This document shows, in pieces, positions 17,160 through 59,769 of a DNA stretch of 64,000 nucleotides. The first letter of the stretch is position 1. Each line of letters begins with the position of its first letter. Source of the stretch: Hydrolagus affinis (Eukaryota); contig JAAILG010000079.1 in the NCBI GenBank assembly GCA_012026655.1, forward strand, positions 62,001 through 126,000, in the 5' to 3' direction. A program made the translations under genes and the position numbers. The notes beneath the pieces were generated by a model. That model saw only the letters and a list, made by a program, of their open reading frames with translations, made no database searches and was not told the origin of the DNA.

Positions 17160-18128
17160 ACAATAAACAACAACAATTTGGATTTCCATAGCGCCCTCCA
17201 CGCCAGATGGCGTCTCAGAGCGTTTCCCAATAACGGCGCCCGAGGCCGAGCTAGTGAGAGAGGGAAAGTGACCATAGGCGCAGTCGAACAGAAAGGACAT
17301 TAAGTGCGGCCTGAAAATGGAAAAGGAGGGGGTGACGCGAAGGGATTGAGGGAGGGAGTTCCAGACCTTCGTGGCTGAAGGCACAGTCGCGACTGTGGAG
17401 CGGAGGATTCGGGGAACAAGGAGGAGGCCACATCCAGGAGAGTGGAGGCAGCAGGTGAGGAGAGAGGCAGGGGGGTTGCAGAGGAGTGGAGAGATTTAAA
17501 CACGAGAGTGAGGATCTTGAAGTTGATCCACTCTGACTGGGAGCCAGTGAAGTCTGGCAAGGACTGAGGTAATCGGGAAGCGAAGTTTGGATCGGGTGAG
17601 AATGCGAGCGGTGGAGTTCTGAATGAACTGAATTTTGTGAATGGTGTTGGAGAGGAAACTGGCGAGGATGGCATTGGGAGTAGTCCAGCTGACAGGTGAC
17701 AAAGGTATGGACCAGGATTTCGGCAGCTTTAGAGGTGAGATATTGGCGGAGACGGACAATATAGAAGAGATGGAAGAAGGCAGTGCTGGTGAGGGACCAG
17801 ATGTGGTGGGAGTAGGTTAATTGGGGGTCGAACCTGACGCCTAGGTTGCGTACAGGTTCGGAATGTTTTAGGGGAATGTCGGGTAGGTGGAGGAGGTGAG
17901 AGGTATGGGACTGAAGACATTGACGAGAGCCAAAGAGTATGGCTGCCGTCTTGTCAACGTTTAGTGGCAGAAAGTTTGCGCTCATCCAGCTCTTGATGTC
18001 TGACAGGCAGACTGACAGAACATCAGAGGACTGGAATCGCAATTTGAGGTGGAAAAGTAGAGTTGGGTGTCATCCGCAAACATGTAGAAGTTTACCCCAT
18101 GTCTGTGGATGACAACACCATGAGGGAA
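17160..18128 (-). mobile_element. L2 LINE 3' fragment
   Basis: DIKSWMSANFLPLNVDKT, VRNLGVRFD, LHWLPV motifs; (TTG)n tail. Confidence 0.9.
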
Positions 18129-37285: not shown

Positions 37286-38699
37286 ACATTCTCACACCCA
37301 CAAACTCTAGTTGAAGCTGACATCACTATTGGTCTCTACGTGACTTTTCTTTCCTTTTAAGTAAGGGCCATAAACATGGATTGGTAGCATAAGAGTGGAT
37401 TACTAGATTAGGTTGTGGTTGAAAAAGAAATTGCAAAAGTTTGGATTACGAGCACAGATGGTGGAATAAGAAACGGCAAGAGTTTTTTTTAAAATAAAAG
37501 GATTTAGCAAATTTCAATCAACTCAAAAAATGGAGAAACTTCTTATGGGATACTGGATGAGTTTACCAGATAGAGAATAAAATAATTTCTAGCATCTGCA
37601 GTATTTTGCATTTTTATTAGAGAATAAAATTATCCTTATGTTTGATATGGTGGCTTCCAAATCAGGATGTCTTACTGCAAAGTGTAGTGCCTGTATTTTG
37701 CAAGTGAAACACTACTGATCATCTATATAAAATAGTGATCCTGCTAAATTAGTTGTCAATATGACTGCAATGATCCACAGATTAATTTATATAGGGGCAG
37801 AATATTGTTTCAAGCGCTCTGAGGTGCTACCCACAGGTGAAGGGCACTATCCATGCAAGTTGTTGTTTTCGGATGCAACATGCAGTGGAGCAAGCATACT
37901 CAAAATCTTGGTGTTAAAGTGTGATGTGAATGAATACAACAACAATCCAACTCTCAACATTTAGTCATTCAAAACCTTGTACCCCATACCCAAAAACATG
38001 CCACCAACACAGCCAAATTAACCCAGTTTTGAATTCAAACATACCAACATGGCAGGGGCCATTATAGAAAGGCACTAAAAATGACAACTCAGATTCACAC
38101 GTTTATATATGACAATTTTTCCTTTATTTGTGAAAGAAAGTTTGACTGCCCTTTCCACATTCAGTGGTTTGAAAGGACTACAGTTTTGAAATTCCTGCAC
38201 TTTTGATTTCCTAAGACAGGCAGGTAACTTGGCTGAACAAGTGAAACAGTAGCCAGCTGATTGTACTCATATTCTTCCAAGTTTGAACAATTTAGATCTG
38301 CAATCTGTATTCTGGAGTTTAATCTATGTACTGAGCTTGAGACAGTAAGGTATGATTGAATAATTATTAGCTTGAGAAAAAAATGTAAACAATATTTCCC
38401 ACAAAGAAACTATAGATTAAAGCTTCTATATGGCATCGATTTTATATCTGGTTTAAGCAATTCAATAGCAGAACACAAAGTTTATCAATCAGGAGGTAAA
38501 TGCAGCATTACTTCAGTGCAATTTAAACAAAGAATTAACATACATTGCCACCTGAGCAAGCTATGACCAAATTACTGGCTGCAGATGGTTAGAGGATAGT
38601 AAATAACTGGTGGGCTGGTTTATTTTGATTTCTCCAAATTTTCCTTAATTAATAATAATAATAATAAAGGTGTCCCCTCTTGCATGTCTCAAATGATAG

Positions 38700-39023
38700 C
38701 AAAACTGAAGAGGACCTAGATTCAATTCCCAGGTGGGACAAAACCTTAGGCAAGTTTCCTTGCTCCACAACGCCTCTGTTTACCTAGCAGTAAGTAGAAA
38801 ACCGGTTGTTAGTCGATTGGTGGATCACTTCTGGAGTAATTATCCCTCAAACAAACTGTGGTCACTCACTCCATGACTGTTTGTGGGACACAGGTGTGCA
38901 CAATTGGCTGCTGCGTTTCACCCAAAAACATACAGTCAATCCATTTTGCAATATTCTGTAAATATTCTTTGATCGTCTCAATGACGTGATGAGGTGCTAG
39001 ATCAAATGCAAGGATTATTATTA
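38700..39023 (+). mobile_element. tRNA-derived SINE (longer variant)
   Basis: B box, core and tail. Confidence 0.78.
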
Positions 39024-40636
39024 CATAATTACACATTTTTCCTTCTGGAATTTACCCATCAGTATATTTATGATTTAAAGAAACTGTAAAGGATTATGTC
39101 CTTATTGTATACTTTTAACAAATGCTCCATTTTGGCAACAAGATTTCACTTCATAATCCAATATAAATTTTCACAGCTTTTTTGCTATAACATGCTCCTC
39201 TGTGCCAGTGGGCACAATTACCTGGAAATCACACCAGCTGCCGACTGCTGCGTGGACTCCAGATCACGGACAGTCAGCAGGCTCGCAACCATTGTTCATG
39301 GCCGTGGACTGCAACAGCCTGGCTAGGGTAAACAGCCATCCGTAGATAGGTATCTTGTGCCTTTCAGGAGGTCCCATTGCTGTGAGACAAGAAGATAAGT
39401 AAGCATCGATTTGCAAAATATGTGATGTTACACTAAAAGTAGGTATACAACAATTAAAGAGACAATAAATATCTCCTTGTTGCCCTACAGTAGGTAAGAA
39501 TATTCTCAAAATACAATATAAAGTTGGGAGCACTCAACTCCCCATTATCCAGCCTATGTTATAGGGATCACATGTAAGACTGACTACCATCCTTCCATAT
39601 ACACGTAAAAGCATTTAGAGACATTTAAAACATGAATCTACAAAGTATAAAAACACGGATTACAAATTCTGATTAGGGATTTTTTTTTAACAAGTACTAT
39701 TGAAAACTTGATGAAAAATCACCAGTCTCCAGGATGGTAGTGGAGCTGCAGATTTATCATCAAGGTTTCTCCAATTAGCTTCCTGTTTTAGTTTCATACA
39801 CTTGCTTATAACTCAGCAAATTATCATTGGAAATATATGCTTAACATCACATAACAGATTGCTAACTGGCATGAACTCCCTCATTGCAAATTGGATGTCA
39901 TTCTGAACACAATATGGGACAGAAATTTTTATCTCTCATCCAAATCTCATCACTTCTACCAGTGCTATCACTCAGCTAGGCTTTCAGCTAAGTCCCAGTG
40001 TAGGTTTTAAACCACATCTAATGACTCTCACCAAGTAAAGTAAGAATGGACACAGAAACGAAAAAACAAATATGAAAGTGTGGGCATATCCATTAAATGG
40101 AAAGATCAAATTTTCTCTGCTCATGGTTGTGGCTCCAATTAAGTTGGGATTAGGAAGTCATCCCCACATCCAAAATACTAATTCTAAACACAATTTTGAA
40201 ACATTTCCCAAATAGGGTTTGAAATGAGTTGGAAAAGGTTTTAGGAAAGAAATTATTATAATTAATTATTAGCATTGGGAGTGTGGAAGGTATCACTTTG
40301 GCATATCCAATGGCAAAATCAATCACTTAAAAGAAATTTAAATGCAGATCTCAAATTTCTCAATATCAAAGCCAGGAATTCTGAAATGCTTTTCCATCTC
40401 TGTTCTCATAAATCAACAAACATCCGTAGCTGCACATAAAACATCTAAAGAAACTTATGACATAACATTACTGCTCAGATAAAGAATGGGGAAGAACAAA
40501 TAAAGCAACCTCAAAAGTTGAATTTTGAATAAAGTTTACTTTATACATAATATTCAACTTTTATGAACCTAGCTTACAAGCTTTCTGGTGGTATCTATAT
40601 ACTTGTACTCCTCCATAAGAATTTTTGACAACTGTT

Positions 40637-40690
40637 TTTATTCATCATGTACAGATAAAGACAGAAACTTATAAATCTGACAGGTTTATT
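40637..40690 (-). terminator. Candidate polyadenylation signals for the CCER1-like gene
   Basis: AATAAA on minus strand at 40685-40690 and 40637-40642, about 140-200 nt after the stop codon. Confidence 0.4.
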
Positions 40691-40832
40691 TTACAGGATT
40701 AGTTAGTTCTGTGTCCTACACAAACAGAAACATCATTGCTTTCTGACAGACCTGGTGAAATTCAGAGTTCTGACTGGAACGGGACATTGGATAGAATTCA
40801 CAAGTCTATGCTTTCAAATGGCGAGTCTTTAA

Positions 40833-41408
40833 TCAGACCCCAGGACTTGAATTATTTTCCAACCTATTGTACAAATCTTCAAAGTTCCTCTTTAGAAACG
40901 TCTCTGTTCTGTCTAAATCTTTCTCAGACGAACAATAGTGTTCAGAAGCACTTTGTGACAAATGTCCATGCTCACCCTGCTTGAGAGATTCCGTGTTTGC
41001 TTGCTCAAAGCTTCCTCGAGAGTATTCGAAGTAAGACAGATAGTCCAACATACTGTCACCCTCCCAATATTTGGGGCATTGTGCAGCAGCTTGCCTTTTG
41101 AGTTCTTGGTACTTTTCATGCATTAGGAACTGGGTGGTGTTCTTTGGTGCTCTCATACCTGGTGCCCTTTTACCATTCAAATTAACAGGCCTCAGCAAGG
41201 CTCCGAGGTCAGGGCAGTTGGATCTTCCTCTCCCATACCTGCCCCACTGCTGCTGCTGGTGCTGCTGCTGCTGGGGATGATGATGTTGTTGTTTCCTGTT
41301 CCTCCATTTTTTCTGGTGAGCACAGCAGCCCTGGGATCGGCAGGCTCGGGGTTTCTTCTGATGAGGGTGCCGTTTGCAGCTTTGATTTATGACGACGTTA
41401 CCCTCCAT
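40833..41408 (-). CDS. CCER1: CCER1-like (coiled-coil glutamate-rich protein 1 family), intronless, 191 aa, HEXIM-like motifs
   Basis: Open frame from ATG at 41408 to TGA at 40833. It contains LLRPVNLNGKRAPGMRAPKNTTQFLMHEKY, matching the conserved CCER1 core (PVN..RAPGMRAPxNTTQFLM, recalled). It lies just 3' of EPYC on the same strand, as in other vertebrates. The ORF-track start at 41537 is not an ATG. Confidence 0.85.
   Translation of the reverse strand: MEGNVVINQSCKRHPHQKKPRACRSQGCCAHQKKWRNRKQQHHHPQQQQHQQQQWGRYGRGRSNCPDLGALLRPVNLNGKRAPGMRAPKNTTQFLMHEKYQELKRQAAAQCPKYWEGDSMLDYLSYFEYSRGSFEQANTESLKQGEHGHLSQSASEHYCSSEKDLDRTETFLKRNFEDLYNRLENNSSPGV
41247..41291 (-). repeat. CAG/CAA/CAT-rich tract encoding QQHHHPQQQQHQQQQ
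   Basis: Seen directly within the CCER1-like CDS. Confidence 0.85.
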
Positions 41409-41959
41409 TAATCTTCCCCACCCCCACCCCCACCTCGACAAAAAAAAACACAGCCTGACCTCAAAACTGTAAGTAGGTAGACGGATGGGTTGTCCAGCAA
41501 AACACAGCACCAGCTGGGCCCCGGCCGTCCGAGCCAACCACCTCTTTCTTATTTCCTTCCAATAACCAAGGTGGGAGTTTATTAACAGGGACTCGGGACA
41601 AAACCGAGGGAGCTCCGGAGTGGGGGGGGGGGGGGGGACGACGACGACGGGACTATGAACAGGTTAGCAGGTGCCTTGGGCTTCTCTCTCGCTGGTTTCC
41701 CGGGCCGTGAGGCCCCCTCTTCGCCGCCTCCTTAACTTTATAACTCTCGTTAAAAAAAATGGTTTTACGGGTCTTCGAAAGGAGCTGGAACACGGTCACG
41801 GCATGAGGGCGTCAGATGGAGAGAGTGAGAAAACCTCCCCACAACTGGGCCTGTCACCCTTCACTCTCGTTAACAGACGGTAGGGTGGGTACATAGACCC
41901 TATTACTAGCGTTTGACAACAAGAGTCTGTCAGTCTGCAGCACCTGACTCTTTCTGATC

Positions 41960-42190
41960 GGTGCCAACTGACGCTGTGGGCCTCTGGAAACGTCCTTTAT
42001 ATAGAGCCCCAGCTCGCAACCCGTGGCTAGGCCGTTGCCACAGTAACCGTTGCCGGCTGGGCTGCTGTCCGGGCAACGACCATTCAGTGCGCGCCTTACC
42101 CCAGCACGTGACTGACAGCACAAACGTGCCCGGATGATAGCTACAGTTGAAGTGGAATGTGTCATGTGACTGCCTGGGTGTCACGTGAAC
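41960..42190 (-). promoter_or_regulatory. Promoter of the CCER1-like gene (TATA box, X-boxes, E-boxes, CpG-rich)
   Basis: TATATAAA on minus strand at 41996-42003; RFX X-box-like GTTGCCACAGTAAC 42034-42047 and GCTGTCCGGGCAAC 42064-42077; CACGTGAC 42105-42112, GTCATGTGAC 42161-42170, GTCACGTG 42180-42187; CpG-rich 41500-42200. Confidence 0.65.
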
Positions 42191-42319
42191 AGTTTGTTTA
42201 TGTGTTTCCCCCCCTTCCCCGGCTGCAGTAGGACTTGGGTCTTCAAATCAGTGGAGAAATTGCTGGCAACTGAAGGGGAGGGGCGTTAGAATTCCTTAAA
42301 ATGTTCCTATTGATGATGT

Positions 42320-42637
42320 GGAGTTCTGTAGCTCAGTAGTTAGAGCACTCGCCTTACAAGCGAGAGACCTGGGTTCAATTCCAGGCAGGTCAGAGCGAAA
42401 TCTTGGGCCAAATTTCCTTACTCCACAAGCCTAATAATAATCCCTCCAAAATAACAATAATAAAATGCTCATTTCAATCCACAACTGTTTATGGGACACT
42501 GCTGGCTGTGCACGATTGGCTGTCGTGTTTCACCTACATATATACAGTCAATTCACATTACAGTGTATTCTGTGAAGCACTTTTGAGAAGTCTAAAAGAC
42601 GTGAAAAGCGCTATATCAAATACAAGGAATATTATTA
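42320..42637 (+). mobile_element. tRNA-derived SINE, full length, just upstream of the CCER1-like promoter
   Basis: TAGCTCAGTAGTTAGAGCACTCGCCTTACAAGCGAG...GGTTCAATTCC head (Val TAC-like loop), core, tail. Confidence 0.9.
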
Positions 42638-44064
42638 AAGTGGGTTAGGCTGTTTGTGGGATGGTCTATTTCCGAATTCTCCTCAGGTGATATGAAAAAG
42701 ACAATAAAAAAGAATAATTGCAACAACAATAACTTACACTTATAAAGCACCCTCCCAGCCGGGTAGCGTCTCAGAGCGCTCAATGTTTGACTCTGAGCCT
42801 GGGGTGGTGGAGGGTTAATATGAGGGCACCAATCTCTATTCCATTTCAAATGGCTTCAAAAGTGCTGGGATACTGTATTTTCACAGCATTAGATGCCCCC
42901 AGTGACTGTTATTGGATTCAATAATCTTCCTTGCATTTCCTTACATTTGAACGCCTTTCACATCAGGAGGATGTCTCAAAGTGCTTCACAGTATTTTCTG
43001 CAACGTGCAGTGACTATATAGGTGAAGCTGTAGATGTATTTTGTGTTGTTAATATGTTAAGAACAACAATAACAGCAAAATTACCCATTTATAGAGCGCC
43101 CTTCAAGGCTGGAGGACCTCCCAAGGTGCTGAAATGTGGATTTACTGAGAAGAAGATTAATTTGATTTTGATTAATGTTCACCTGATGTGAAAAGCGCTA
43201 ATCAAATGTGATTTTGTTGTTGTAATCTCTTGTAAGAAATTTGGGGCTATCACTAGACAGTTATTCTATCAAAATAATGCACTAAAGAATAAGCAGGAAA
43301 ATTTGTATTGTATTATGTTACTGTATCTGTCACCTGATTTAAATCCAGAACTGAAAAGGGTGGGTACCAGTCCATTCTGGAAACTATGGAATCACTTATC
43401 CACAACACAAACCAGTTTATTGTATTAATAATCCTTACATTTGATGCAGCATCATTTACTTCAGGGTTGCATCTAAAGATTTTACTGTGAGGTGTAATTA
43501 CTTTATGTGTTGTTTTTATGATCAAATTGCCTTTTACCTATTAGGCTGCAATAATATTTCTTCTGCAATATGCATTTGATATCTTAACATTCCCAATATG
43601 CTGTGCAACTAAAGGGTAGGATGTCTTTTTATACCAAGGTTTCAAATATCCTGCTGTTAGGAGACAAGTAAAAGCCATATGGATCAGGTGGGGAGAGGAA
43701 GTAATAGATTGTTTCTCTATTCTCTGCTTCACATATTCCAATTTTCTGTGCAATCCTTGCTTCTTTTAGACCCTTCTTACGTATTTAAATGGATTCTCCC
43801 ATTTTCCCCCCATTTCATTCCTCTACCCTTTTCCAGACTTCCCATCGTTGAACGATAGGCTTCTTGCTGATTCTGGCATTTGGGGGTGGACTGTTACCAT
43901 ACCATAAAACTATGTCATTCTGCTATTTAGTACAGTTCTTTCTTATTCCTTCGGGAAAGAGAGCATTGTAAGTCTCCCGAACAGTCATGCGATTTTTTTC
44001 CTTCCTACGAATTTTCAAGGAATGATATGACATTTTAATGGGATTAGAGTATCAGTTGATGGCA

Positions 44065-46660
44065 CTCTGGGTGAGGAGATGTGAATGGACTCGTTGAGCC
44101 AAAGAGCCAAAGAGTATGGCCTCCGTCTTGTCAACATTCAGCTGCAAGAAATGTGCGCTCATCCAGCTCCTGAAGCCTGACAGACAGACTGACAGAACAT
44201 CAGTGGGCTGGGGGTCGCAAAGTGAAGTGGAGAAATAGAATTGGGTGTCATCCGCGTACATGTGGAAGTGTACCCCATGTCTGCGGATGACATCCCCAAG
44301 AGGGAGCGTATAGATGAGGAAGAGGAGGGGGCCAAGGATGGATCCCTGGGGTACCCCACAGGTAACTGGGTAAGAGCGGGAGGAAAAGCCATTTATGGAG
44401 ATGTACTGCTGGCAGTTTGTGAGGTAGGACTTGAACCAGGTGAGTGCGATCCCACTGAGGTCGATGACGGAGGACAGGCGGTAGAGGAGGATGGTGTGGT
44501 CGACTGTGTCGAACACAGCGGACAGGTCCAGGAGGATAAGGAGACAGAGGTCACAGATAGAGAGGACGTCGTTTATGACTTTCACGAGCGCAGTCTCTGT
44601 ACTGTGGGCAGGGAGGAAACCAGACTGGAGGGATTCGAAGAGGGAGTGGGAGGAGAGGTGGGCGCGGAGTTGGTTTGCAACAACGCGTTCCAGTGCCTTT
44701 GAAAGGAAGGGCAGGTTAGAGATAGGGCGGTAGTGGCTGGGGTTTGAGGGATCTAGGGAGGGTTTCTTAAGGAGGGGGGTGATGGCAGCAGTTTTGAAGG
44801 GGACAGGGACTGATTCCCTGGAGAGGGACTGGTTGATGATATCAGCCAGCAGTGGGCAAAGGAGGGGGAGGTGGGTGAGCAGTAGGTTGATGGGAATGGG
44901 GTCGAGGCAGCAGGTTGATGGCTTCAAGGAGGTGAGAGTGCGTGAGAGGGAGGAAAGAGAGACTGGGGAGAAGGAGTGTAGGAAGGGGGTCGAGGTGGGA
45001 GTTGATGACAGGAAGGGTGAGGGGCATGGGATAGGGGTAGAGGGTGACGAGAGGCAGGAGGATGAGGCTGCCTGGCGGATATTTTGGATTTTTGAGGAAA
45101 AGAAATCCATGATCTCCTCGCACTTCGCATTTGAAGTGGAGATTGAGGAGGCCTGAGGGGATGCATGGAGGAGGTGGTGGGTGGTGGAAAAGAGGACTGG
45201 GATTGTTTGCCTCCAGGAAAATGTTGGAGTAGTAGACCGTTTTCGCTCGACGCAAAGAACGGCGGCAGCTGTGGAGATGCTCGAGCCACAGTTGGTGGTG
45301 AACCGTGAGGCCAGTTTTCTGCCATCTGAGCTCGAGCAGCCGGGTTTGGGATTTAAGGGAGCGGAGATGAGCATTGTACCAGGGGGAGTGGGTGGGTTTC
45401 GAGATAGATCTGGATTTATGGAGGACGAGAGAGTAGAAAGTGGAGGAGAGGCGATCATGGAGCAGCTGGACAGCTACTTCAGGATCACTGTGGGTGGAAG
45501 ACCAGAGGGGTAGGAGGTCGGAGGATGTGAGGGCCTCTGTGAGTGTCTCAGGGGGGAGACTTTTCCAAGGGCAGAAAAGTACAGTTGAGGGCTTGGTGGA
45601 GGAGAGAGAGATGGAAGAGGAGAAGGAGAGAAGAAAGTGGTCTGAGATGGCCTTATCCGAGATGCTGAGTTCGGAAATGTCAAGGCCGTGGGTGATAATG
45701 AGGTCAAGAGGTGGCCACGATTGTGGGTCGGTGAGTCGATGTGGAGGGTGAGGTTTAGAGAGGAGAGGAGGGCAGTGAAGTCGGAAGAGTTGGTGCAGGG
45801 GGAGTTTAGGTGAAGGTTGAAATTGCCTATGATGAGCAGACGTTCAGAGCAGAGGGACTGGGAGGAGAGAAGAGTGGAGATATCGGGAGGAAAGAGCCAG
45901 GGGGTTTAGGAGGACGATAGAATAGAAGGATTTTTAAGGAAAGAGAAGGATAGTAGAGCATGAGATGTTCGAAGGAGGGGAAGCAGCCGGAGAAATAGGG
46001 GGAGAGACCAAGGGAGGCGTTGGAGATGATGGCCACCCCGCCGCTGCGTTGGTTGGGGCAGGGGGTGTGGTGGAAGGTGTAGCCTGGAGGGGAGGCTCGA
46101 CCAGAGGCACGGGGTCATTGGGGGAGAGCCAGGTTTCTGTAAGCCCAATAATATCAATGTTCTCATCCAGGATGAGGTCATAGATAGTGAGGGCTTTGTT
46201 GGAAAGGGAATGGATGTTCTGGAGGGCAGTGCGGATGGGTTTGCTGAATGGGGGAGGAGAGAGTGGTGCAGAGAGGATCTGAGGGTGTGTAGGAGAGGTG
46301 GGTCTGGGGAGAGAGGAGGGAGGGGAAGTGGGGAGGGTACGTATGGCAGAGGGGGAAGTAGTGCTTGCCTTGGGTGGAGAGAGTGGATGATGGGACAGTT
46401 GAGGCGGCTGCTCTGGGACACCCAGCGCCTGGTGCCACGATGGGCCCGGCGGAGGATCCCCAGACTGGAGCAGAGGGAAGCGGTGATGGGGGCCAGGAGG
46501 GAGAGTAGGCGGGTGGGGGGCGGGGGAGGAGGGAGAGTAGGACAGAGTTAGAATAGCGGATAGAGGGAGGTGGTGGGAGAGACATCGAGGGGGGTGGGAA
46601 GAGAGACATTTAGGGTGGTGGGGGAGGCTCGGTTCGGGGCAGCAGCCAAAACGCGCACGC
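44065..46660 (-). mobile_element. L2-clade LINE ORF2 (APE endonuclease + reverse transcriptase), frameshifted, no 3' tail
   Basis: QNIHSLSNK..IIGLTETWL (endonuclease); YRPISNLPFLSKALE, LLDLSAVFDTVDH, GVPQGSILGPLLF, YADDTQ (RT); multiple frameshifts. Confidence 0.93.
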
Positions 46661-57792: not shown

Positions 57793-58905
57793 AACATAAG
57801 AACATAAGAATTAGGAGCAGGAGTAGGCCATTCGGCCCCTCGAGCCTGCCCCGCCATTTGATAAGATCATGGCTGATCTTCTGACCTAACTCTAATTACC
57901 TGCCCTATCCCCATATCCTCTAATCCCTCTATATTTTAAAAATCTATCAGTCTCAGTCTTGAAAATGTTCAAGGACTGAACATCTACAGCCTTCTGGGGT
58001 AGTGAATTCCATAAATTTACCACCCTTTGAGTGTAGAAATGTTTCCTCAACTCTGTTCTAAAAGACTGACCCATAATTTTAAGATTATGACCCCTGGTTA
58101 TAGATTCTCCTACCAGGGGAAACAGTCCCTCACTGTCTACTTTATCCAGCCCTTTAAGAATCTTATATGTTTCAATAAGATCTCCCCTAATTCTTCTGTA
58201 CTCTAGAGAATACAGCCCTAATCTATTCAACCTATCCTCATAGGTCAGTCCCCTCTTTCCAGGAACTAACCTAGTGAATCTACGCTGCTCCCCCTCTAAG
58301 GCAAGTATGTCCTTTATTAAGGAGACCAAAACTGCACACAATACTCTAGATGCGGTCTCACCAAGGCCCTTTATAGTTGCAGCAAGACTTCCCTACTCTT
58401 GTACTCTAAATCTTTTGCAATGAACGCTAACATACCGTTTGCCTTCTTAGTTGCTTGCTGCACCTGCAAACTAACTTTTTGAGACTGGTGTACAAGGACA
58501 CCCAAATCCCTTTGTACATTAACACTATCTAACCTCTCCCTGTCCAGAAGATCATTTGCTTTTTTATTTTTGCTACCTAGGTGAATAATTTCACACTTCC
58601 CCACATTATATTCCATCTGCCACCTATTTGCCCACTCCCCTAGCCTATTTATATGTTGCAATCTTATTGCATCATCCTCACAGCTGACTCTCCTACCTAG
58701 TTTAGTGTCATCCATGAATTTAGACACATTACATTCAATGTCCTCGTGTAGATCATTGATGTAAATTGTAAAAAGCTGAGTCCCAAGCACTGATCCTTGT
58801 GGCACTCCACTAGTTACATCCTGCCAATTCGAGAATGACCGTTTATCCCTACTCTCTGTTTTCTACCTGTTAGCCACTCTTCTATCCATGTTAATATGTT
58901 CCCAT
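57793..58905 (-). mobile_element. CR1 LINE 3' fragment (RT C-terminal part + tail) in EPYC intron
   Basis: PQGSVLG..KFMDDTKLG, QRRFTRLVPG..LYSLEYRRIRGDLIE; (TTCTTATG)n tail. Confidence 0.93.
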
Positions 58906-59046: not shown

Positions 59047-59769
59047 GTGATGGAACAGAGAGACCTGGGGATTTGTATTAGTGACTCTTTGAAGGTGGCA
59101 GGACATGTAGACAAAGCCGTTAAGAAGGCATATGGGATACTAGGCTTTATAAATAGGGGTATAGAGTACAAAAGTCAGGAAGTGCTGACTAACCTCCATA
59201 AAACTTTGGTTAGGCCTCAGCTGGAGTACTGTGTCCAATTCTGGTCACCACACTACAGAAAGGATGTTAAGGCATTGGAAAGGGTGCAAAAAAGGTTTAC
59301 TAGAATGGTACCAGGATTGAGGGACTTCAGTTATGGGGAAAGGCTAGATAGGCTAGGTTTATTCTCTTTAGAACAGAGAAGGTTGAGAGGAGACCTAATA
59401 GAGGTTTATAAAATCATGAGGGGATTCGACAGGGTAAATAAGGAAAAACTGTTTCCACTGGTGGGTGAATCAGTAACTCGTGGTCACAGATTTAAAATAG
59501 TTTCAAAATGAAGCAGAGGGGAGCTGAGGAGAAATTTTTTCACTCAGCAGGTTATTTGAATCTGGAATACATTTCCTGAAGAGGTGGTGGAGGCCGATTT
59601 GATAACAGCTTTTAAAAGAGAATTAGATCTTTATTTAGGGAGAACAGGTCTGTTTGGTTATGGGAAAGAGAGCTGGGCAGTGGGATTGAGTTGCTCTTTT
59701 CAAAGAGCCGGCACAGACTAGATGAGCCGAATAGCCTTCTTTTGTGCCGTAAAATTCTATGTTTCTATG
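59047..59769 (+). mobile_element. CR1 LINE 3' fragment (second subfamily)
   Basis: RPQLEYCVQFWSPHYRKDVKALERVQKRFTRM; tail ttctatgtttctatg. Confidence 0.93.

What the first reader, a model, noticed from the sequence alone, without database searches (positions are those of the whole stretch)
40833..41408. CCER1-like protein looks like a truncated HEXIM paralog (possible 7SK/P-TEFb regulator)
Seen in the sequence: a basic region (KRHPHQKKPR...KKWRNRK), then APKNTTQFLM (aa 87-96, P88-M96 at 41121-41147), an acidic/Ser linker, then FLKRNFEDLYNRL (F171-Y180 at 40869-40898), ending shortly after. Known: HEXIM1/2 have, in the same order, an Arg/Lys-rich 7SK-binding region, APYNTTQFLM (the CDK9-inhibiting PYNT motif), an acidic region and FLQRDFSETYERY, followed by a coiled coil that binds cyclin T. 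Inference: CCER1 derives from HEXIM, and this compact cartilaginous-fish version shows the ancestral layout. It has PKNT in place of PYNT, lacks the C-terminal coiled coil, and lacks the long Glu-rich tract of mammalian CCER1. It could act as a germ-line 7SK binder, a decoy or a modulator of P-TEFb.
Basis: partly seen in the sequence, partly recalled or inferred. Interest (0 to 1): 0.8.

Follow-up and report, generated by a model that had tools for sequence, protein, structure and literature searches.

The report
CCER1-like gene carrying HEXIM motifs
An expressed gene of a chimaera-type fish encodes a small CCER1-family protein that keeps, in the same order, two short sequence blocks by which HEXIM proteins hold the transcription kinase P-TEFb, which suggests that the male-fertility gene family CCER1 descends from HEXIM.

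Summary
Window 40833-41408 (-) is an intact 191-codon ORF with the stated motifs at the stated coordinates. PolyA RNA reads cover it on the matching strand. It is 84% identical to a Callorhinchus protein.

It belongs to the CCER1 / wu:fb55g09 family: Pfam CCER1 scores 49.2 bits against a cut-off of 27.

Descent from HEXIM is supported, not proven:
- Pfam HEXIM aligns aa 86-186 to profile 37-118 at E 1e-5, but 26.2 bits is under the cut-off of 29.
- 37 of 68 scanned relatives hit HEXIM at E <= 0.01.
- A lamprey member passes the HEXIM cut-off.
- An HMM of the CCER1 C-terminal block alone finds FLQKDFSETYE in a frog HEXIM1-like protein; 0 of 20,000 shuffles reached its score.

Against: CCER1 profiles retrieved no HEXIM protein with the PYNT motif. 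The C-terminal half alone hits nothing in Pfam. The Tyr of PYNT is absent in 113 of 113 members. There is no HEXIM-type basic motif and no coiled coil.

P-TEFb or 7SK binding is untested. Five literature searches found no paper linking the families or naming a third HEXIM. The scan holds a similar first-reader note on another piece of this genome (s1-906262).

The parts
40833..41408 (-). Coding sequence of the unspliced isoform: 191 aa plus TGA stop (CCER1 / wu:fb55g09-family protein)
   Evidence: ORF and translation. Pfam CCER1 E 7.8e-13, 49.2 bits. 84% identity to Callorhinchus P0001. Continuous polyA RNA read cover.
41292..41375 (-). Basic, Cys/His-containing N-terminal region (aa 12-39, KRHPHQKK...KKWRNRK)
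   Evidence: Sequence. A basic region is present in all relatives but poorly aligned. No tool aligned it to the HEXIM basic region.
41247..41291 (-). Gln/His low-complexity run (aa 40-54), a CAG-type repeat
   Evidence: Sequence. Read laying skipped 41241-41300 as a repeat.
41106..41198 (-). Family core LLRPVNLNGKRAPGMRAPKNTTQFLMHEKYQ (aa 71-101). It contains the HEXIM-like inhibitory-domain motif.
   Evidence: 18 invariant columns in A1. hhalign to frog HEXIM-like proteins: probability 93.7%, E 2e-7 over 30 columns. tblastn with frog HEXIM1-like P0050 hits here at E 1e-6. Predicted helix 91-110, pLDDT 73-81.
41121..41147 (-). PKNTTQFLM (aa 88-96), counterpart of HEXIM1 202-PYNTTQFLM-210 with Lys for Tyr
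   Evidence: HEXIM motif from PMC12901311. The residue after Pro is R81/K15/H11/E4/L1/P1 and never Y in 113 family proteins.
41004..41060 (-). Middle block GDSMLDYLSYFEYSRGSFE (aa 117-135), conserved with teleost DMDSYLGVLENARGAL and lamprey
   Evidence: Alignment A1. Predicted helix 120-140.
40854..40940 (-). C-terminal block HYCSSEKDLDRTETFLKRNFEDLYNRLEN (aa 157-185)
   Evidence: Conserved in 25 short-form relatives. Predicted helix 162-185, pLDDT 71-84. The Pfam HEXIM alignment reaches aa 186 = profile 118.
40860..40898 (-). FLKRNFEDLYNRL (aa 171-183), counterpart of HEXIM1 FLQRDFSETYERY (first helix of the cyclin-T-binding domain)
   Evidence: The HMM of the CCER1 C-terminal block scores frog HEXIM1-like P0122 at 9.7 bits on FLQKDFSETYE; 0 of 20,000 shuffles reach that. 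Best of 2,159 other six-frame peptides of the window is 8.5 bits. The HEXIM1 motif is printed from 2gd7_A.
40975..40976 (-). Internal 5' splice site AGG|GTGAGC (exon ends at 40976) inside codon 145. Using it removes the C-terminal HEXIM-like block.
   Evidence: 7 reads of RNA run X4 leave the window sequence at 40976 and continue with letters that match 39350-39379 exactly. Sequence checked. Shark isoforms P0003/P0004 join at the same place.
41158..41159 (-). Second internal 5' splice site CAG|GTATGA (exon ends at 41159), same phase. Using it removes PKNTTQFLM as well.
   Evidence: One contig of run X1 (another organism; that it is RNA is a guess) leaves at 41159 and continues with the same 30 letters. 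Sequence checked.
39264..39379 (-). Alternative last coding exon: acceptor ...ttgtctcacag|C at 39380/39379. It encodes (A)MGPPERHKIPIYGWLFTLARLLQSTAMNNGCEPADCP plus stop.
   Evidence: The same tail (GPPERHK[KR]PVYR[WR]LLP) ends the shark proteins P0003, P0004 and P0030.
41409..41640 (-). 5' untranslated region (at least). Transcripts run on beyond 41640.
   Evidence: RNA depth 10-25 up to 41632, with loose ends that continue upstream. Only 40560-41640 was laid.
41150..42350 (.). CpG-island-like, G+C-rich stretch over the 5' part of the gene and its presumed promoter
   Evidence: GC 52-58% against 30-40% around it. CpG observed/expected 0.57 against 0.24 in 38001-41000.
40637..40690 (-). Two AATAAA signals (40685-40690 and 40637-40642) for the unspliced mRNA
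   Evidence: Sequence. RNA depth falls from about 10 to about 2 across 40744-40634.

Best explanation
This is an expressed gene of the vertebrate CCER1 / wu:fb55g09 family in a holocephalan (chimaera-type) genome. Its main, unspliced mRNA encodes a largely disordered 191-aa nuclear-type protein. The protein has a basic N-terminus, an invariant core (LRPVN..G.RAPGMRAP[K/R]NT[T/N]QF[L/I]M) and a helical C-terminal block (SE.D...[S/T]E.F[L/M].[R/K][D/N]F..[L/F][Y/C]), and it ends shortly after that block.

The family most likely descends from a HEXIM gene by duplication early in vertebrates, since a lamprey member exists. It keeps two HEXIM segments: the CDK9-directed inhibitory-domain motif, and the first helix of the cyclin-T-binding domain (the SETYER region). 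It has lost three things: the Tyr of PYNT, the HEXIM-type bipartite Arg-rich 7SK-binding motif, and the dimerising coiled coil.

Inferred and not shown: the two retained blocks still dock on P-TEFb (CDK9/cyclin T) or a close CDK/cyclin pair as a monomer and without 7SK. The protein would then modulate the kinase, or compete with HEXIM for it, and would not sequester it. In cartilaginous fishes, conserved alternative splicing yields isoforms without the cyclin-T-helix block, or without both blocks.
For: Gene and family:
- Intact ORF.
- Pfam CCER1 49.2 bits against a cut-off of 27.
- Orthologues in Callorhinchus (84% identity), sharks, coelacanth, teleosts and amphibians, with 18 invariant core columns.
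- PolyA RNA cover with strand bias consistent with the minus strand. Of 5 differences in the ORF, 3 are synonymous, 1 keeps the stop and 1 changes a residue.

HEXIM link:
- Pfam HEXIM E 1e-5, aa 86-186 against profile 37-118.
- 37 of 68 scanned members hit HEXIM at E <= 0.01.
- Lamprey P0037 scores 35.3 bits on HEXIM, above the cut-off, while the CCER1 profile finds it at E 1.3e-14.
- Amia P0048 aligns aa 98-174 to HEXIM profile 36-112.
- The frog HEXIM1-like P0050 was retrieved by the CCER1 profile from 1.84 billion representatives at E 3.7e-4.
- hhalign gives 93.7% probability and also pairs RA.GMR with QRAS.M across a 10-residue gap, a gap that P0050 itself carries.
- C-terminal block test: 9.7 bits on FLQKDFSETYE of P0122; 0 of 20,000 shuffles and 0 of 2,159 other window peptides were as good; P0122 is the best non-family protein among all stored ones.
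- The C-terminal block is predicted helical, and the matching HEXIM1 residues open the solved cyclin-T-binding domain.

Function of the family: mouse CCER1 is nuclear, sits in euchromatin, and its loss lowers Tnp1/2 and Prm1/2 transcripts (passages of PMC10713660).
Against: - The Pfam HEXIM score (26.2 bits) is below the curated cut-off of 29.
- The C-terminal 91 aa alone give no Pfam hit.
- hhalign aligned only 30 columns and not the C-terminal block; my HEXIM side was only three atypical frog proteins.
- Pairwise BLASTP finds only the 9-residue core (E 0.026).
- CCER1 profiles found no HEXIM protein with the PYNT motif among 1.84 billion representatives (38 hits), none in the 5.8-billion collection (66 hits) and none in the PDB (0 hits at E <= 10).
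- The Atlas gave no usable hit.
- 0 of 113 family members keep the Tyr of PYNT. A PYNT-to-PNND mutant abolishes HEXIM-based inhibition (passage of PMC6245832).
- The cyclin-T-binding coiled coil and the KHRR-type motif are absent.
- The Tyr/Arg of the SETYER-like part are kept only in cartilaginous fishes and lamprey: 9 Y, 21 C and 2 F among the 32 members with the hexamer.
- The tree does not resolve where the HEXIM-like rows join.
- No interaction data exist. The CCER1 paper does not mention CDK9, P-TEFb or 7SK.
Confidence: 0.72

Rival explanations
1. Common descent with HEXIM is real, but the function has moved away from P-TEFb. The retained blocks now serve another role, such as docking on a different kinase or partner, nuclear import, or self-association in condensates. 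CCER1 then affects spermatid chromatin by phase separation alone, as published.
For: The Tyr of PYNT is replaced in 113 of 113 members. There is no coiled coil and no HEXIM-type basic motif. The published mouse work explains CCER1 by condensate formation and histone marks without any P-TEFb link. The SETYER-like Tyr is Cys in 21 of 32 members.
Against: The core N, T, Q, F and M residues are invariant or nearly so from lamprey to mammals, which points to a conserved specific partner. Both retained blocks are the ones that HEXIM papers name as contacting P-TEFb. Loss of CCER1 lowers specific transcripts.
Confidence: 0.4
2. There is no common descent. CCER1 and HEXIM share short linear motifs by convergence or chance, and the Pfam cross-hits are driven by one 7-9 residue string.
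For: Most of the score sits in AP.NTTQFLM: 16.5 of 26.2 bits, and only the core in BLASTP. No standard search joined the two families. Both proteins are disordered and of low complexity, where short matches arise easily.
Against: A second, separate block matches at the expected place and in the expected order, with empirical P below 5e-5. The residues upstream of the motif also pair. A lamprey member passes the HEXIM cut-off. The genes of the family are single-coding-exon (for mouse and human; here); that HEXIM genes are intronless too is recalled, not tested.
Confidence: 0.15
3. The ORF is not a functional gene (a pseudogene or a chance ORF).
For: None beyond its small size and low-complexity N-terminus.
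Against: 84% identity to Callorhinchus and conservation across vertebrates. Strand-specific polyA RNA cover, mostly synonymous differences and a preserved stop. A CpG-island-like 5' region.
Confidence: 0.02

Closest known systems
HEXIM1 / HEXIM2 (Pfam PF15313), the 7SK-dependent inhibitors of P-TEFb
   Same: Same order of a basic region, then [RA..M.]..AP.NTTQFLM, then an acidic/Ser-rich linker, then F-L-x-R-[D/N]-F-x-x-x-Y-x-R in a helix.
   Different: Lys/Arg/His in place of the Tyr of PYNT. A 10-residue shorter spacer before the motif. No KHRR..PS..KKKR-type basic motif and no WKPY.KLTWEEKK segment. The protein ends 8 residues after the block, so it has no cyclin-T-binding or dimerising coiled coil. 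Its Pfam score is below the family cut-off.
Mammalian CCER1 (C12orf12; Pfam PF15482), a germ-line intrinsically disordered protein needed for the histone-to-protamine transition (PMC10713660)
   Same: Same invariant core LRPVN..G.RAPGMRAP.NTTQF. A related middle block (D.LY.F[LV].[ND]PSL). A C-terminal remnant ...LFM.QD[FI]N. at the very end. Single coding exon.
   Different: Mammalian proteins are about 400 aa, with a long extra N-terminal part and a long Glu-rich tract between the core and the C-terminal remnant. Their C-terminal block no longer scores on the fish-based model (at most -0.8 bits). One-to-one orthology of the window gene with mammalian CCER1 is unresolved.
Teleost and shark 'uncharacterized protein wu:fb55g09' / ccer1
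   Same: Same length class (about 180-260 aa), same core with HEKYQ after the motif, same middle and C-terminal blocks.
   Different: Teleosts have NTNQ for NTTQ and Cys for the Tyr of the C-terminal block.
Lamprey LOC133351804 (P0037; transcripts P0060-P0062, about 200 aa)
   Same: LRPRNVNG...GLRAPHNTTQFLM...TEDFMERDFAAVYRE, ending 10 residues after the hexamer. The CCER1 profile finds it at E 1.3e-14.
   Different: Pfam calls it HEXIM (35.3 bits) and not CCER1. It has His after the Pro.
Frog short 'HEXIM1-like' proteins (P0122 Rana, P0123, P0050 Ranitomeya)
   Same: P0050 carries GMRAPHNTTQFLM with the same 10-residue gap as CCER1. P0122 carries FLQKDFSETYEKYH.
   Different: They keep the HEXIM basic motif and WKPYNKLTWEEKK, and P0122/P0123 keep the coiled coil; 2gd7_A matches at E 2.4e-25. 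They are true HEXIM derivatives, not CCER1 members.

Membership tests
CCER1 (Pfam PF15482; CCER1 / wu:fb55g09 family) | Score at or above the Pfam gathering cut-off (27 bits) | tested here: met
   49.2 bits, E 7.8e-13, aa 48-107 against profile 132-201 of 215.
CCER1 (Pfam PF15482; CCER1 / wu:fb55g09 family) | Invariant core LRPVN..G.RAPGMRAP.NT.QF[LI]M.{3}YQ | tested here: met
   All 18 invariant columns of A1 are present in the window protein. The core is found in 113 of 117 family proteins on hand.
CCER1 (Pfam PF15482; CCER1 / wu:fb55g09 family) | Single coding exon | tested here: met
   Uninterrupted ORF with continuous RNA cover; mouse and human genes are single-exon. In addition, alternative splicing from two internal donors to a downstream exon occurs here.
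CCER1 (Pfam PF15482; CCER1 / wu:fb55g09 family) | Long Glu-rich tract / predicted coiled coil of mammalian CCER1 | tested here: not met
   Absent from the 191-aa protein; present in the mammalian proteins P0084, P0086 and P0067. It is a mammalian addition and is not shared by fish members.
CCER1 (Pfam PF15482; CCER1 / wu:fb55g09 family) | Germ-line (spermatid) expression | not testable with these tools
   PolyA RNA reads exist, but sample and tissue are coded.
CCER1 (Pfam PF15482; CCER1 / wu:fb55g09 family) | One-to-one orthology with mammalian CCER1 | tested here: inconclusive
   In the tree of 41 rows, cartilaginous fishes form their own clade (100/100) in an unresolved fork with a teleost+lamprey group, an Amia/Arapaima group and the HEXIM-like rows.
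HEXIM (Pfam PF15313) | Score at or above the Pfam gathering cut-off (29 bits) | tested here: not met
   26.2 bits, E 1e-5. Lamprey P0037 does pass, at 35.3 bits.
HEXIM (Pfam PF15313) | Bipartite Arg/Lys-rich 7SK-binding motif (KKKHRRR-PS-KKKRHWK type) | tested here: not met
   A basic region is present, but it has no KHRR..PS..KKKR pattern and no tool aligned it. The motif definition comes from PMC10083321.
HEXIM (Pfam PF15313) | PYNT motif within PYNTTQFLM (CDK9 inhibitory domain) | tested here: not met
   The window has PKNTTQFLM: 8 of 9 residues are kept but the Tyr is Lys. No family member has Tyr (0 of 113).
HEXIM (Pfam PF15313) | Acidic region after the motif | tested here: inconclusive
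   An acidic/Ser-rich linker is present (aa 117-170), but it is low-complexity and has no specific alignment.
HEXIM (Pfam PF15313) | FLQRDFSETYER(Y) helix at the start of the cyclin-T-binding domain | tested here: met
   FLKRNFEDLYNRL, with F, L, R, F, Y and R kept. Pfam aligns it to profile positions up to 118. The C-terminal block HMM matches P0122 with 0 of 20,000 shuffles as good. It is predicted helical.
HEXIM (Pfam PF15313) | C-terminal dimeric coiled coil that binds cyclin T | tested here: not met
   The ORF stops 8 residues after the block. 30 of 32 members with the hexamer end 8-17 residues after it.
HEXIM (Pfam PF15313) | 7SK-dependent binding and inhibition of P-TEFb | not testable with these tools
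   This needs co-IP, RIP or EMSA and a kinase assay.

The most novel reading that the evidence does not exclude
The CCER1 family is a third, so far unrecognised branch of the HEXIM family in vertebrates. It would be a monomeric, 7SK-independent protein that still docks on CDK9/cyclin T through the P[K/R]NTTQF[L/I]M core and the FMxRDF helix. Because the inhibitory Tyr is replaced and the coiled coil is lost, it would not shut the kinase off. Instead it would compete with HEXIM and hold active P-TEFb, in mammals inside CCER1 condensates, to drive the last burst of transcription (Tnp, Prm) in spermatids. In cartilaginous fishes, alternative splicing would switch the cyclin-T helix, or both blocks, on and off.
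Probability: 0.25. Interest if true: 0.85.

Novelty: new variant of a known kind. Interest (0 to 1): 0.64.

Why it matters
CCER1 is needed for male fertility in mice, and loss-of-function variants are linked to azoospermia in men. Its mechanism is described only as phase separation (PMC10713660).

HEXIM1/2 are the central brakes on P-TEFb, and the passages I read describe only two paralogues in mammals. If CCER1 is a HEXIM derivative that keeps the two P-TEFb-contacting blocks, two things follow:
- The fertility phenotype gets a concrete, testable molecular hypothesis: control of CDK9 availability in spermatids.
- The HEXIM field gets a natural "minimal" variant with Tyr changed to Lys/Arg, no coiled coil and no 7SK-binding motif, which could be used to separate binding from inhibition.

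I found no paper that holds both CCER1 and HEXIM, C12orf12 and HEXIM1, or CCER1 and CDK9, and none with 'HEXIM3'. The compact fish forms make the relation visible because they lack the mammalian additions.

Tried and rejected
1. I tried several routes to get standard (PYNT-bearing) HEXIM sequences for a proper profile-profile test and a rooted tree. All failed.
- The CCER1 profile A1 against 1.84 billion representatives gave 38 hits, none with PYNT.
- The mixed alignment A2 against the 5.8-billion collection gave 66 hits, all CCER1-type, unnamed or without Pfam.
- P0050 alone gave 4 hits, only frog short HEXIM1-like proteins, because of the length window.
- The Atlas returns no sequences.
As a result the HEXIM side of my hhalign rests on three atypical frog proteins, and the tree cannot place the root.

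2. Searching the PDB with the CCER1 profile gave 0 hits at E <= 10.

3. Pfam on the C-terminal 91 aa and on the last 55 aa alone gave no family. The C-terminal similarity is therefore not significant by itself in a 24,736-model search. It shows only in context (+9.7 bits) and in the directed test.

4. AlphaFold2 gave a low-confidence, mostly disordered model (mean pLDDT 58.9). I did not run fold searches on it because they would be meaningless.

5. The Rfam scan of the window found only tRNA-like hits, no 7SK or other RNA of interest.

6. I looked for a second copy or a HEXIM gene in the window by tblastn and found none.

7. I rejected a chance ORF or pseudogene on the evidence.

8. I rejected reading the lamprey name 'PAK4-inhibitor INKA2-like' as a property of the family. 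P0055 and P0058 are a neighbouring gene that one fused gene model (P0059) pulled into the same cluster.

9. Kobbi et al. 2016 (PMC5111705) is not held; I know it only from a reference list. I opened no supplements. Supplementary Figs 1-2 of PMC12901311 (HEXIM alignments) may bear on which HEXIM residues are conserved.

Recalled, from no call: that HEXIM genes are intronless; the human map positions of HEXIM1/2; the single-residue role of Tyr203.
Full report
**What is there**

On the minus strand, window 40833-41408 is an uninterrupted ORF of 191 codons plus TGA. The start MEGNVV matches the start of the closest relatives.
- basic region, aa 12-39 (41292-41375);
- a Gln/His repeat, aa 40-54;
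- the core LLRPVNLNGKRAPGMRAPKNTTQFLMHEKYQ, aa 71-101 (41106-41198), with PKNTTQFLM at 41121-41147;
- a middle block, aa 117-135;
- an acidic/Ser-rich stretch;
- HYCSSEKDLDRTETFLKRNFEDLYNRLEN, aa 157-185, with FLKRNFEDLYNRL at 40860-40898.

The protein ends 8 residues later.

**It is a real, expressed gene**

The best relative is a Callorhinchus milii protein (84% identity). Next come shark proteins named 'wu:fb55g09' or 'CCER1-like', then coelacanth, teleost and amphibian proteins. So the window comes from a holocephalan.

One polyA RNA run (X4) gave 218 reads on 40560-41640, and a sister run (X3) gave 19. Nearly all have the first mate on the + strand, which fits an RNA from the minus strand in the usual stranded library. 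Cover is continuous from about 40700 to beyond 41630, apart from a skipped CAG repeat.

The reads differ from the window at five ORF positions. Three are synonymous, one turns TGA into TAA, and one gives Q9E.

The 5' part of the gene lies in a G+C-rich stretch with CpG observed/expected 0.57, against 0.24 in 38001-41000. Two AATAAA signals lie at 40685-40690 and 40637-40642, where RNA depth falls. Tissue and species of the runs are coded, so germ-line expression could not be checked.

**Family**

Pfam places the protein in CCER1 (PF15482): 49.2 bits against a cut-off of 27. In an 18-sequence alignment, L72, R73, P74, N76, G79, G84, M85, R86, A87, P88, N90, T91, Q93, F94, L95, M96, Y100 and Q101 are invariant.

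Mammalian CCER1 proteins (about 400 aa) share this core. They add a long N-terminal part and a long Glu-rich tract, and they end in ...LFM.QD[FI]N., which looks like a worn copy of the fish FM.RDF block.

A tree of 41 rows puts the cartilaginous-fish proteins in one clade (100/100). It leaves their relation to tetrapod CCER1, to a teleost+lamprey group and to an Amia/Arapaima group unresolved. I therefore call the gene a CCER1-family member and do not claim one-to-one orthology with mammalian CCER1. Two first-reader notes of this scan point to further CCER1-like loci in the same genome; I could not see them.

**The link to HEXIM: evidence for**

(a) Pfam HEXIM (PF15313) aligns aa 86-186 of the window protein to profile positions 37-118 of 142, E 1e-5, 26.2 bits. 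The first 100 residues alone give 16.5 bits. The part after the motif therefore adds about 10 bits, and the span ends where FLKRNFEDLYNRLEN would lie on FLQRDFSETYERYH.

(b) Of 68 proteins scanned one by one, 60 hit CCER1 and 37 hit HEXIM at E <= 0.01. Two of the 68 (P0055, P0058) later proved to be an INKA2-like neighbour gene and not family members.

(c) There are bridging sequences:
- The lamprey protein P0037 is found by the CCER1 profile at E 1.3e-14 but is scored by Pfam as HEXIM at 35.3 bits, above the cut-off, with no CCER1 hit.
- Amia P0048 aligns aa 98-174 to HEXIM profile 36-112.
- The CCER1 profile also pulled a frog 'HEXIM1-like' protein (P0050) out of 1.84 billion representatives at E 3.7e-4. 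P0050 has a HEXIM basic motif, WKPYNKLTWEEKK and GMRAPHNTTQFLM.

(d) hhalign of 25 short CCER1 forms against three frog HEXIM-like proteins gives probability 93.7% and E 2e-7 over 30 columns. It pairs G.RAPGMR with SQRAS.M across a 10-residue gap, and P0050 itself carries that gap.

(e) A test that leaves the NTTQFLM motif out altogether. I built an HMM from the C-terminal block of the 25 CCER1 forms. It scores the frog HEXIM1-like P0122 at 9.7 bits, exactly on FLQKDFSETYE.
- None of 20,000 shuffles of P0122 reaches that score (maximum 9.1).
- None of the 2,159 other six-frame peptides of the window does either (best 8.5).
- Among all stored proteins, P0122 is the best hit outside the family.
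- P0122 is a true HEXIM: it matches the HEXIM1 cyclin-T-binding domain 2gd7_A at E 2.4e-25, and that alignment prints SEFLQRDFSETYERYH for HEXIM1.

(f) Conservation in orthologues. 113 of 117 family proteins carry the core. 32 (all non-tetrapod) carry F[LM].[RKQ][DN]F downstream of it. 30 of those 32 end 8-17 residues after the hexamer. The residue four places after the second Phe is Y in 9, C in 21 and F in 2.

(g) AlphaFold2 predicts a mostly disordered protein (mean pLDDT 58.9) with helices at 91-110, 120-140 and 162-185. The C-terminal block is therefore helical, like the segment that opens the solved HEXIM1 domain.

**The link to HEXIM: evidence against**

- The Pfam HEXIM score is under the curated cut-off.
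- The C-terminal 91 residues alone hit nothing in Pfam.
- hhalign did not extend to the C-terminal block.
- BLASTP against P0122 finds only APKNTTQFL (E 0.026; lamprey E 0.003).
- No HEXIM protein with the PYNT motif came up with CCER1 profiles in either large database or in the PDB. The Atlas gave no usable hit.
- The basic region has no HEXIM-type signature.
- I could not obtain standard HEXIM sequences (see Tried and rejected), so the decisive masked profile-profile test and a rooted tree are still to be done.

My estimate is about 0.8 for common descent of the core-to-C-terminal segment and about 0.15 for convergence or chance.

**What the HEXIM literature says about the shared blocks (passages only)**

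- PYNTTQFLM (202-210) binds and inactivates CDK9. It lies between the basic and acidic regions, and the coiled coil (254-359) binds cyclin T1 (PMC12901311; PMC10083321).
- PYNT and SETYER (SDVYER in flies) are 'required to bind and inhibit' P-TEFb (PMC3384314).
- A PYNT-to-PNND change abolishes inhibition by a HEXIM1-Tat chimera (PMC6245832).

In the CCER1 family the residue after Pro is R (81), K (15), H (11), E (4), L (1) or P (1), and never Y. The family thus keeps most of both contact blocks. It lacks the Tyr, the RNA-binding signature and the dimerising, cyclin-binding coiled coil.

**Mechanism**

Shown: an expressed, conserved, disordered small protein of the CCER1 family with two HEXIM-like blocks in HEXIM order.

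Inferred: descent from HEXIM early in vertebrates.

Inferred with less confidence (about 0.35): the blocks still dock on CDK9/cyclin T or a close relative, as a monomer and without 7SK, so that the protein modulates the kinase or competes for it and does not sequester it. This would fit the mouse data that nuclear, euchromatic CCER1 is needed for normal Tnp1/2 and Prm1/2 transcript levels (PMC10713660). That paper never mentions CDK9, P-TEFb or 7SK.

The main rival is that the blocks now serve another partner, or only condensate formation.

**An unexpected feature of the locus**

- Seven X4 reads leave the window sequence at 40976, and one X1 contig (another organism) leaves at 41159. Both continue with the same 30 letters, which match 39350-39379 exactly and only there.
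- Both break points are good 5' splice sites: AGG|GTGAGC and CAG|GTATGA. They are 183 bases apart, so they are in the same phase.
- The target is preceded by a pyrimidine tract and CAG.
- The downstream exon encodes (A)MGPPERHKIPIYGWLFTLARLLQSTAMNNGCEPADCP plus stop.
- The shark proteins P0003, P0004 and P0030 end in the same tail, joined at the same place.

The alternative splicing is therefore conserved between chimaeras and sharks. It yields isoforms without the C-terminal HEXIM-like block or, from the upstream donor, without the PKNTTQFLM core as well. I read the isoforms exon by exon and did not build the joined sequences. From the depths (7 spliced reads against depth 18-24 nearby; cover of 14-19 over 40856-40929), the unspliced form appears to be the major one in run X4.

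**Novelty**

The gene family is known and named. The relation to HEXIM is visible in databases only as overlapping Pfam hits on single proteins, for example Callorhinchus P0001.

Full-text searches found no paper holding CCER1 and HEXIM, C12orf12 and HEXIM1, or CCER1 and CDK9, and none with 'HEXIM3'. The one paper with 'fb55g09' is unrelated. These searches cover only the held library.

I class it as a new variant of a known kind (a HEXIM-derived branch with a changed inhibitory motif and no coiled coil), with moderate-to-high interest because it gives the fertility gene CCER1 a testable molecular hypothesis.

Noticed in passing
window 39264-39379, 40975-40976, 41158-41159 (minus strand): The 'single-exon' gene is alternatively spliced from two in-phase internal donors to a downstream exon. 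That exon encodes a different tail (MGPPERHK...), and the same tail ends three annotated shark proteins (P0003, P0004, P0030).
   Followed up: partly
window 42323-42392 (+): A tRNA-Val(TAC)-like sequence (Rfam 52.5 bits; ARAGORN agrees) lies about 0.7 kb upstream of the last place laid with RNA, at the edge of the G+C-rich stretch. It may be a true tRNA gene or the head of a SINE. Four weaker tRNA-like hits lie elsewhere in the window.
   Followed up: partly
window 41420-41427 (5' UTR, G-run repeat ggtgggggtgggggtgggg on the minus strand): About half of the RNA reads of X4 (11-13 of 19-21) lack 1+4+2 letters here. This is a length difference in a short G-rich repeat just upstream of the ATG, either between individuals or between species.
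   Followed up: no
P0059 (Lampetra fluviatilis gene model), P0055/P0058: In lampreys the CCER1-like gene lies next to an INKA2-like (FAM212) gene. One fused gene model joins them, which put both proteins into one 90% cluster and lends the misleading name 'PAK4-inhibitor INKA2-like'.
   Followed up: partly
P0122, P0123, P0050 (frogs): Anuran genomes carry short 'HEXIM1-like' proteins (106-177 aa) with the acidic region deleted. In P0122, PYNTT runs straight into FLQKDFSETYEKYH. P0050 has a 10-residue deletion that creates a CCER1-like GMRAPHNTTQFLM.
   Followed up: partly
P0048 (Amia), P0120 (Arapaima), P0045: A second ray-finned-fish group with NTTQYLM[NH][IL]VY[RQ]D forms its own clade (97/99) apart from the teleost wu:fb55g09 group. 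This hints at two paralogues in ray-finned fishes. A first-reader note (s1-906537) proposes a CCER1 ohnolog elsewhere in this genome.
   Followed up: partly
window 44052-45458 (-), 57892-58805 (-), 59047-59511 (+), 17251-18042 (-): These are long ORFs that look like fragments of reverse transcriptases of LINE-type retroelements (for example ...FHMYADDTQFY...). The gene sits among repeats, and no other host gene was recognised in the 64 kb. They were not scanned against Pfam.
   Followed up: no
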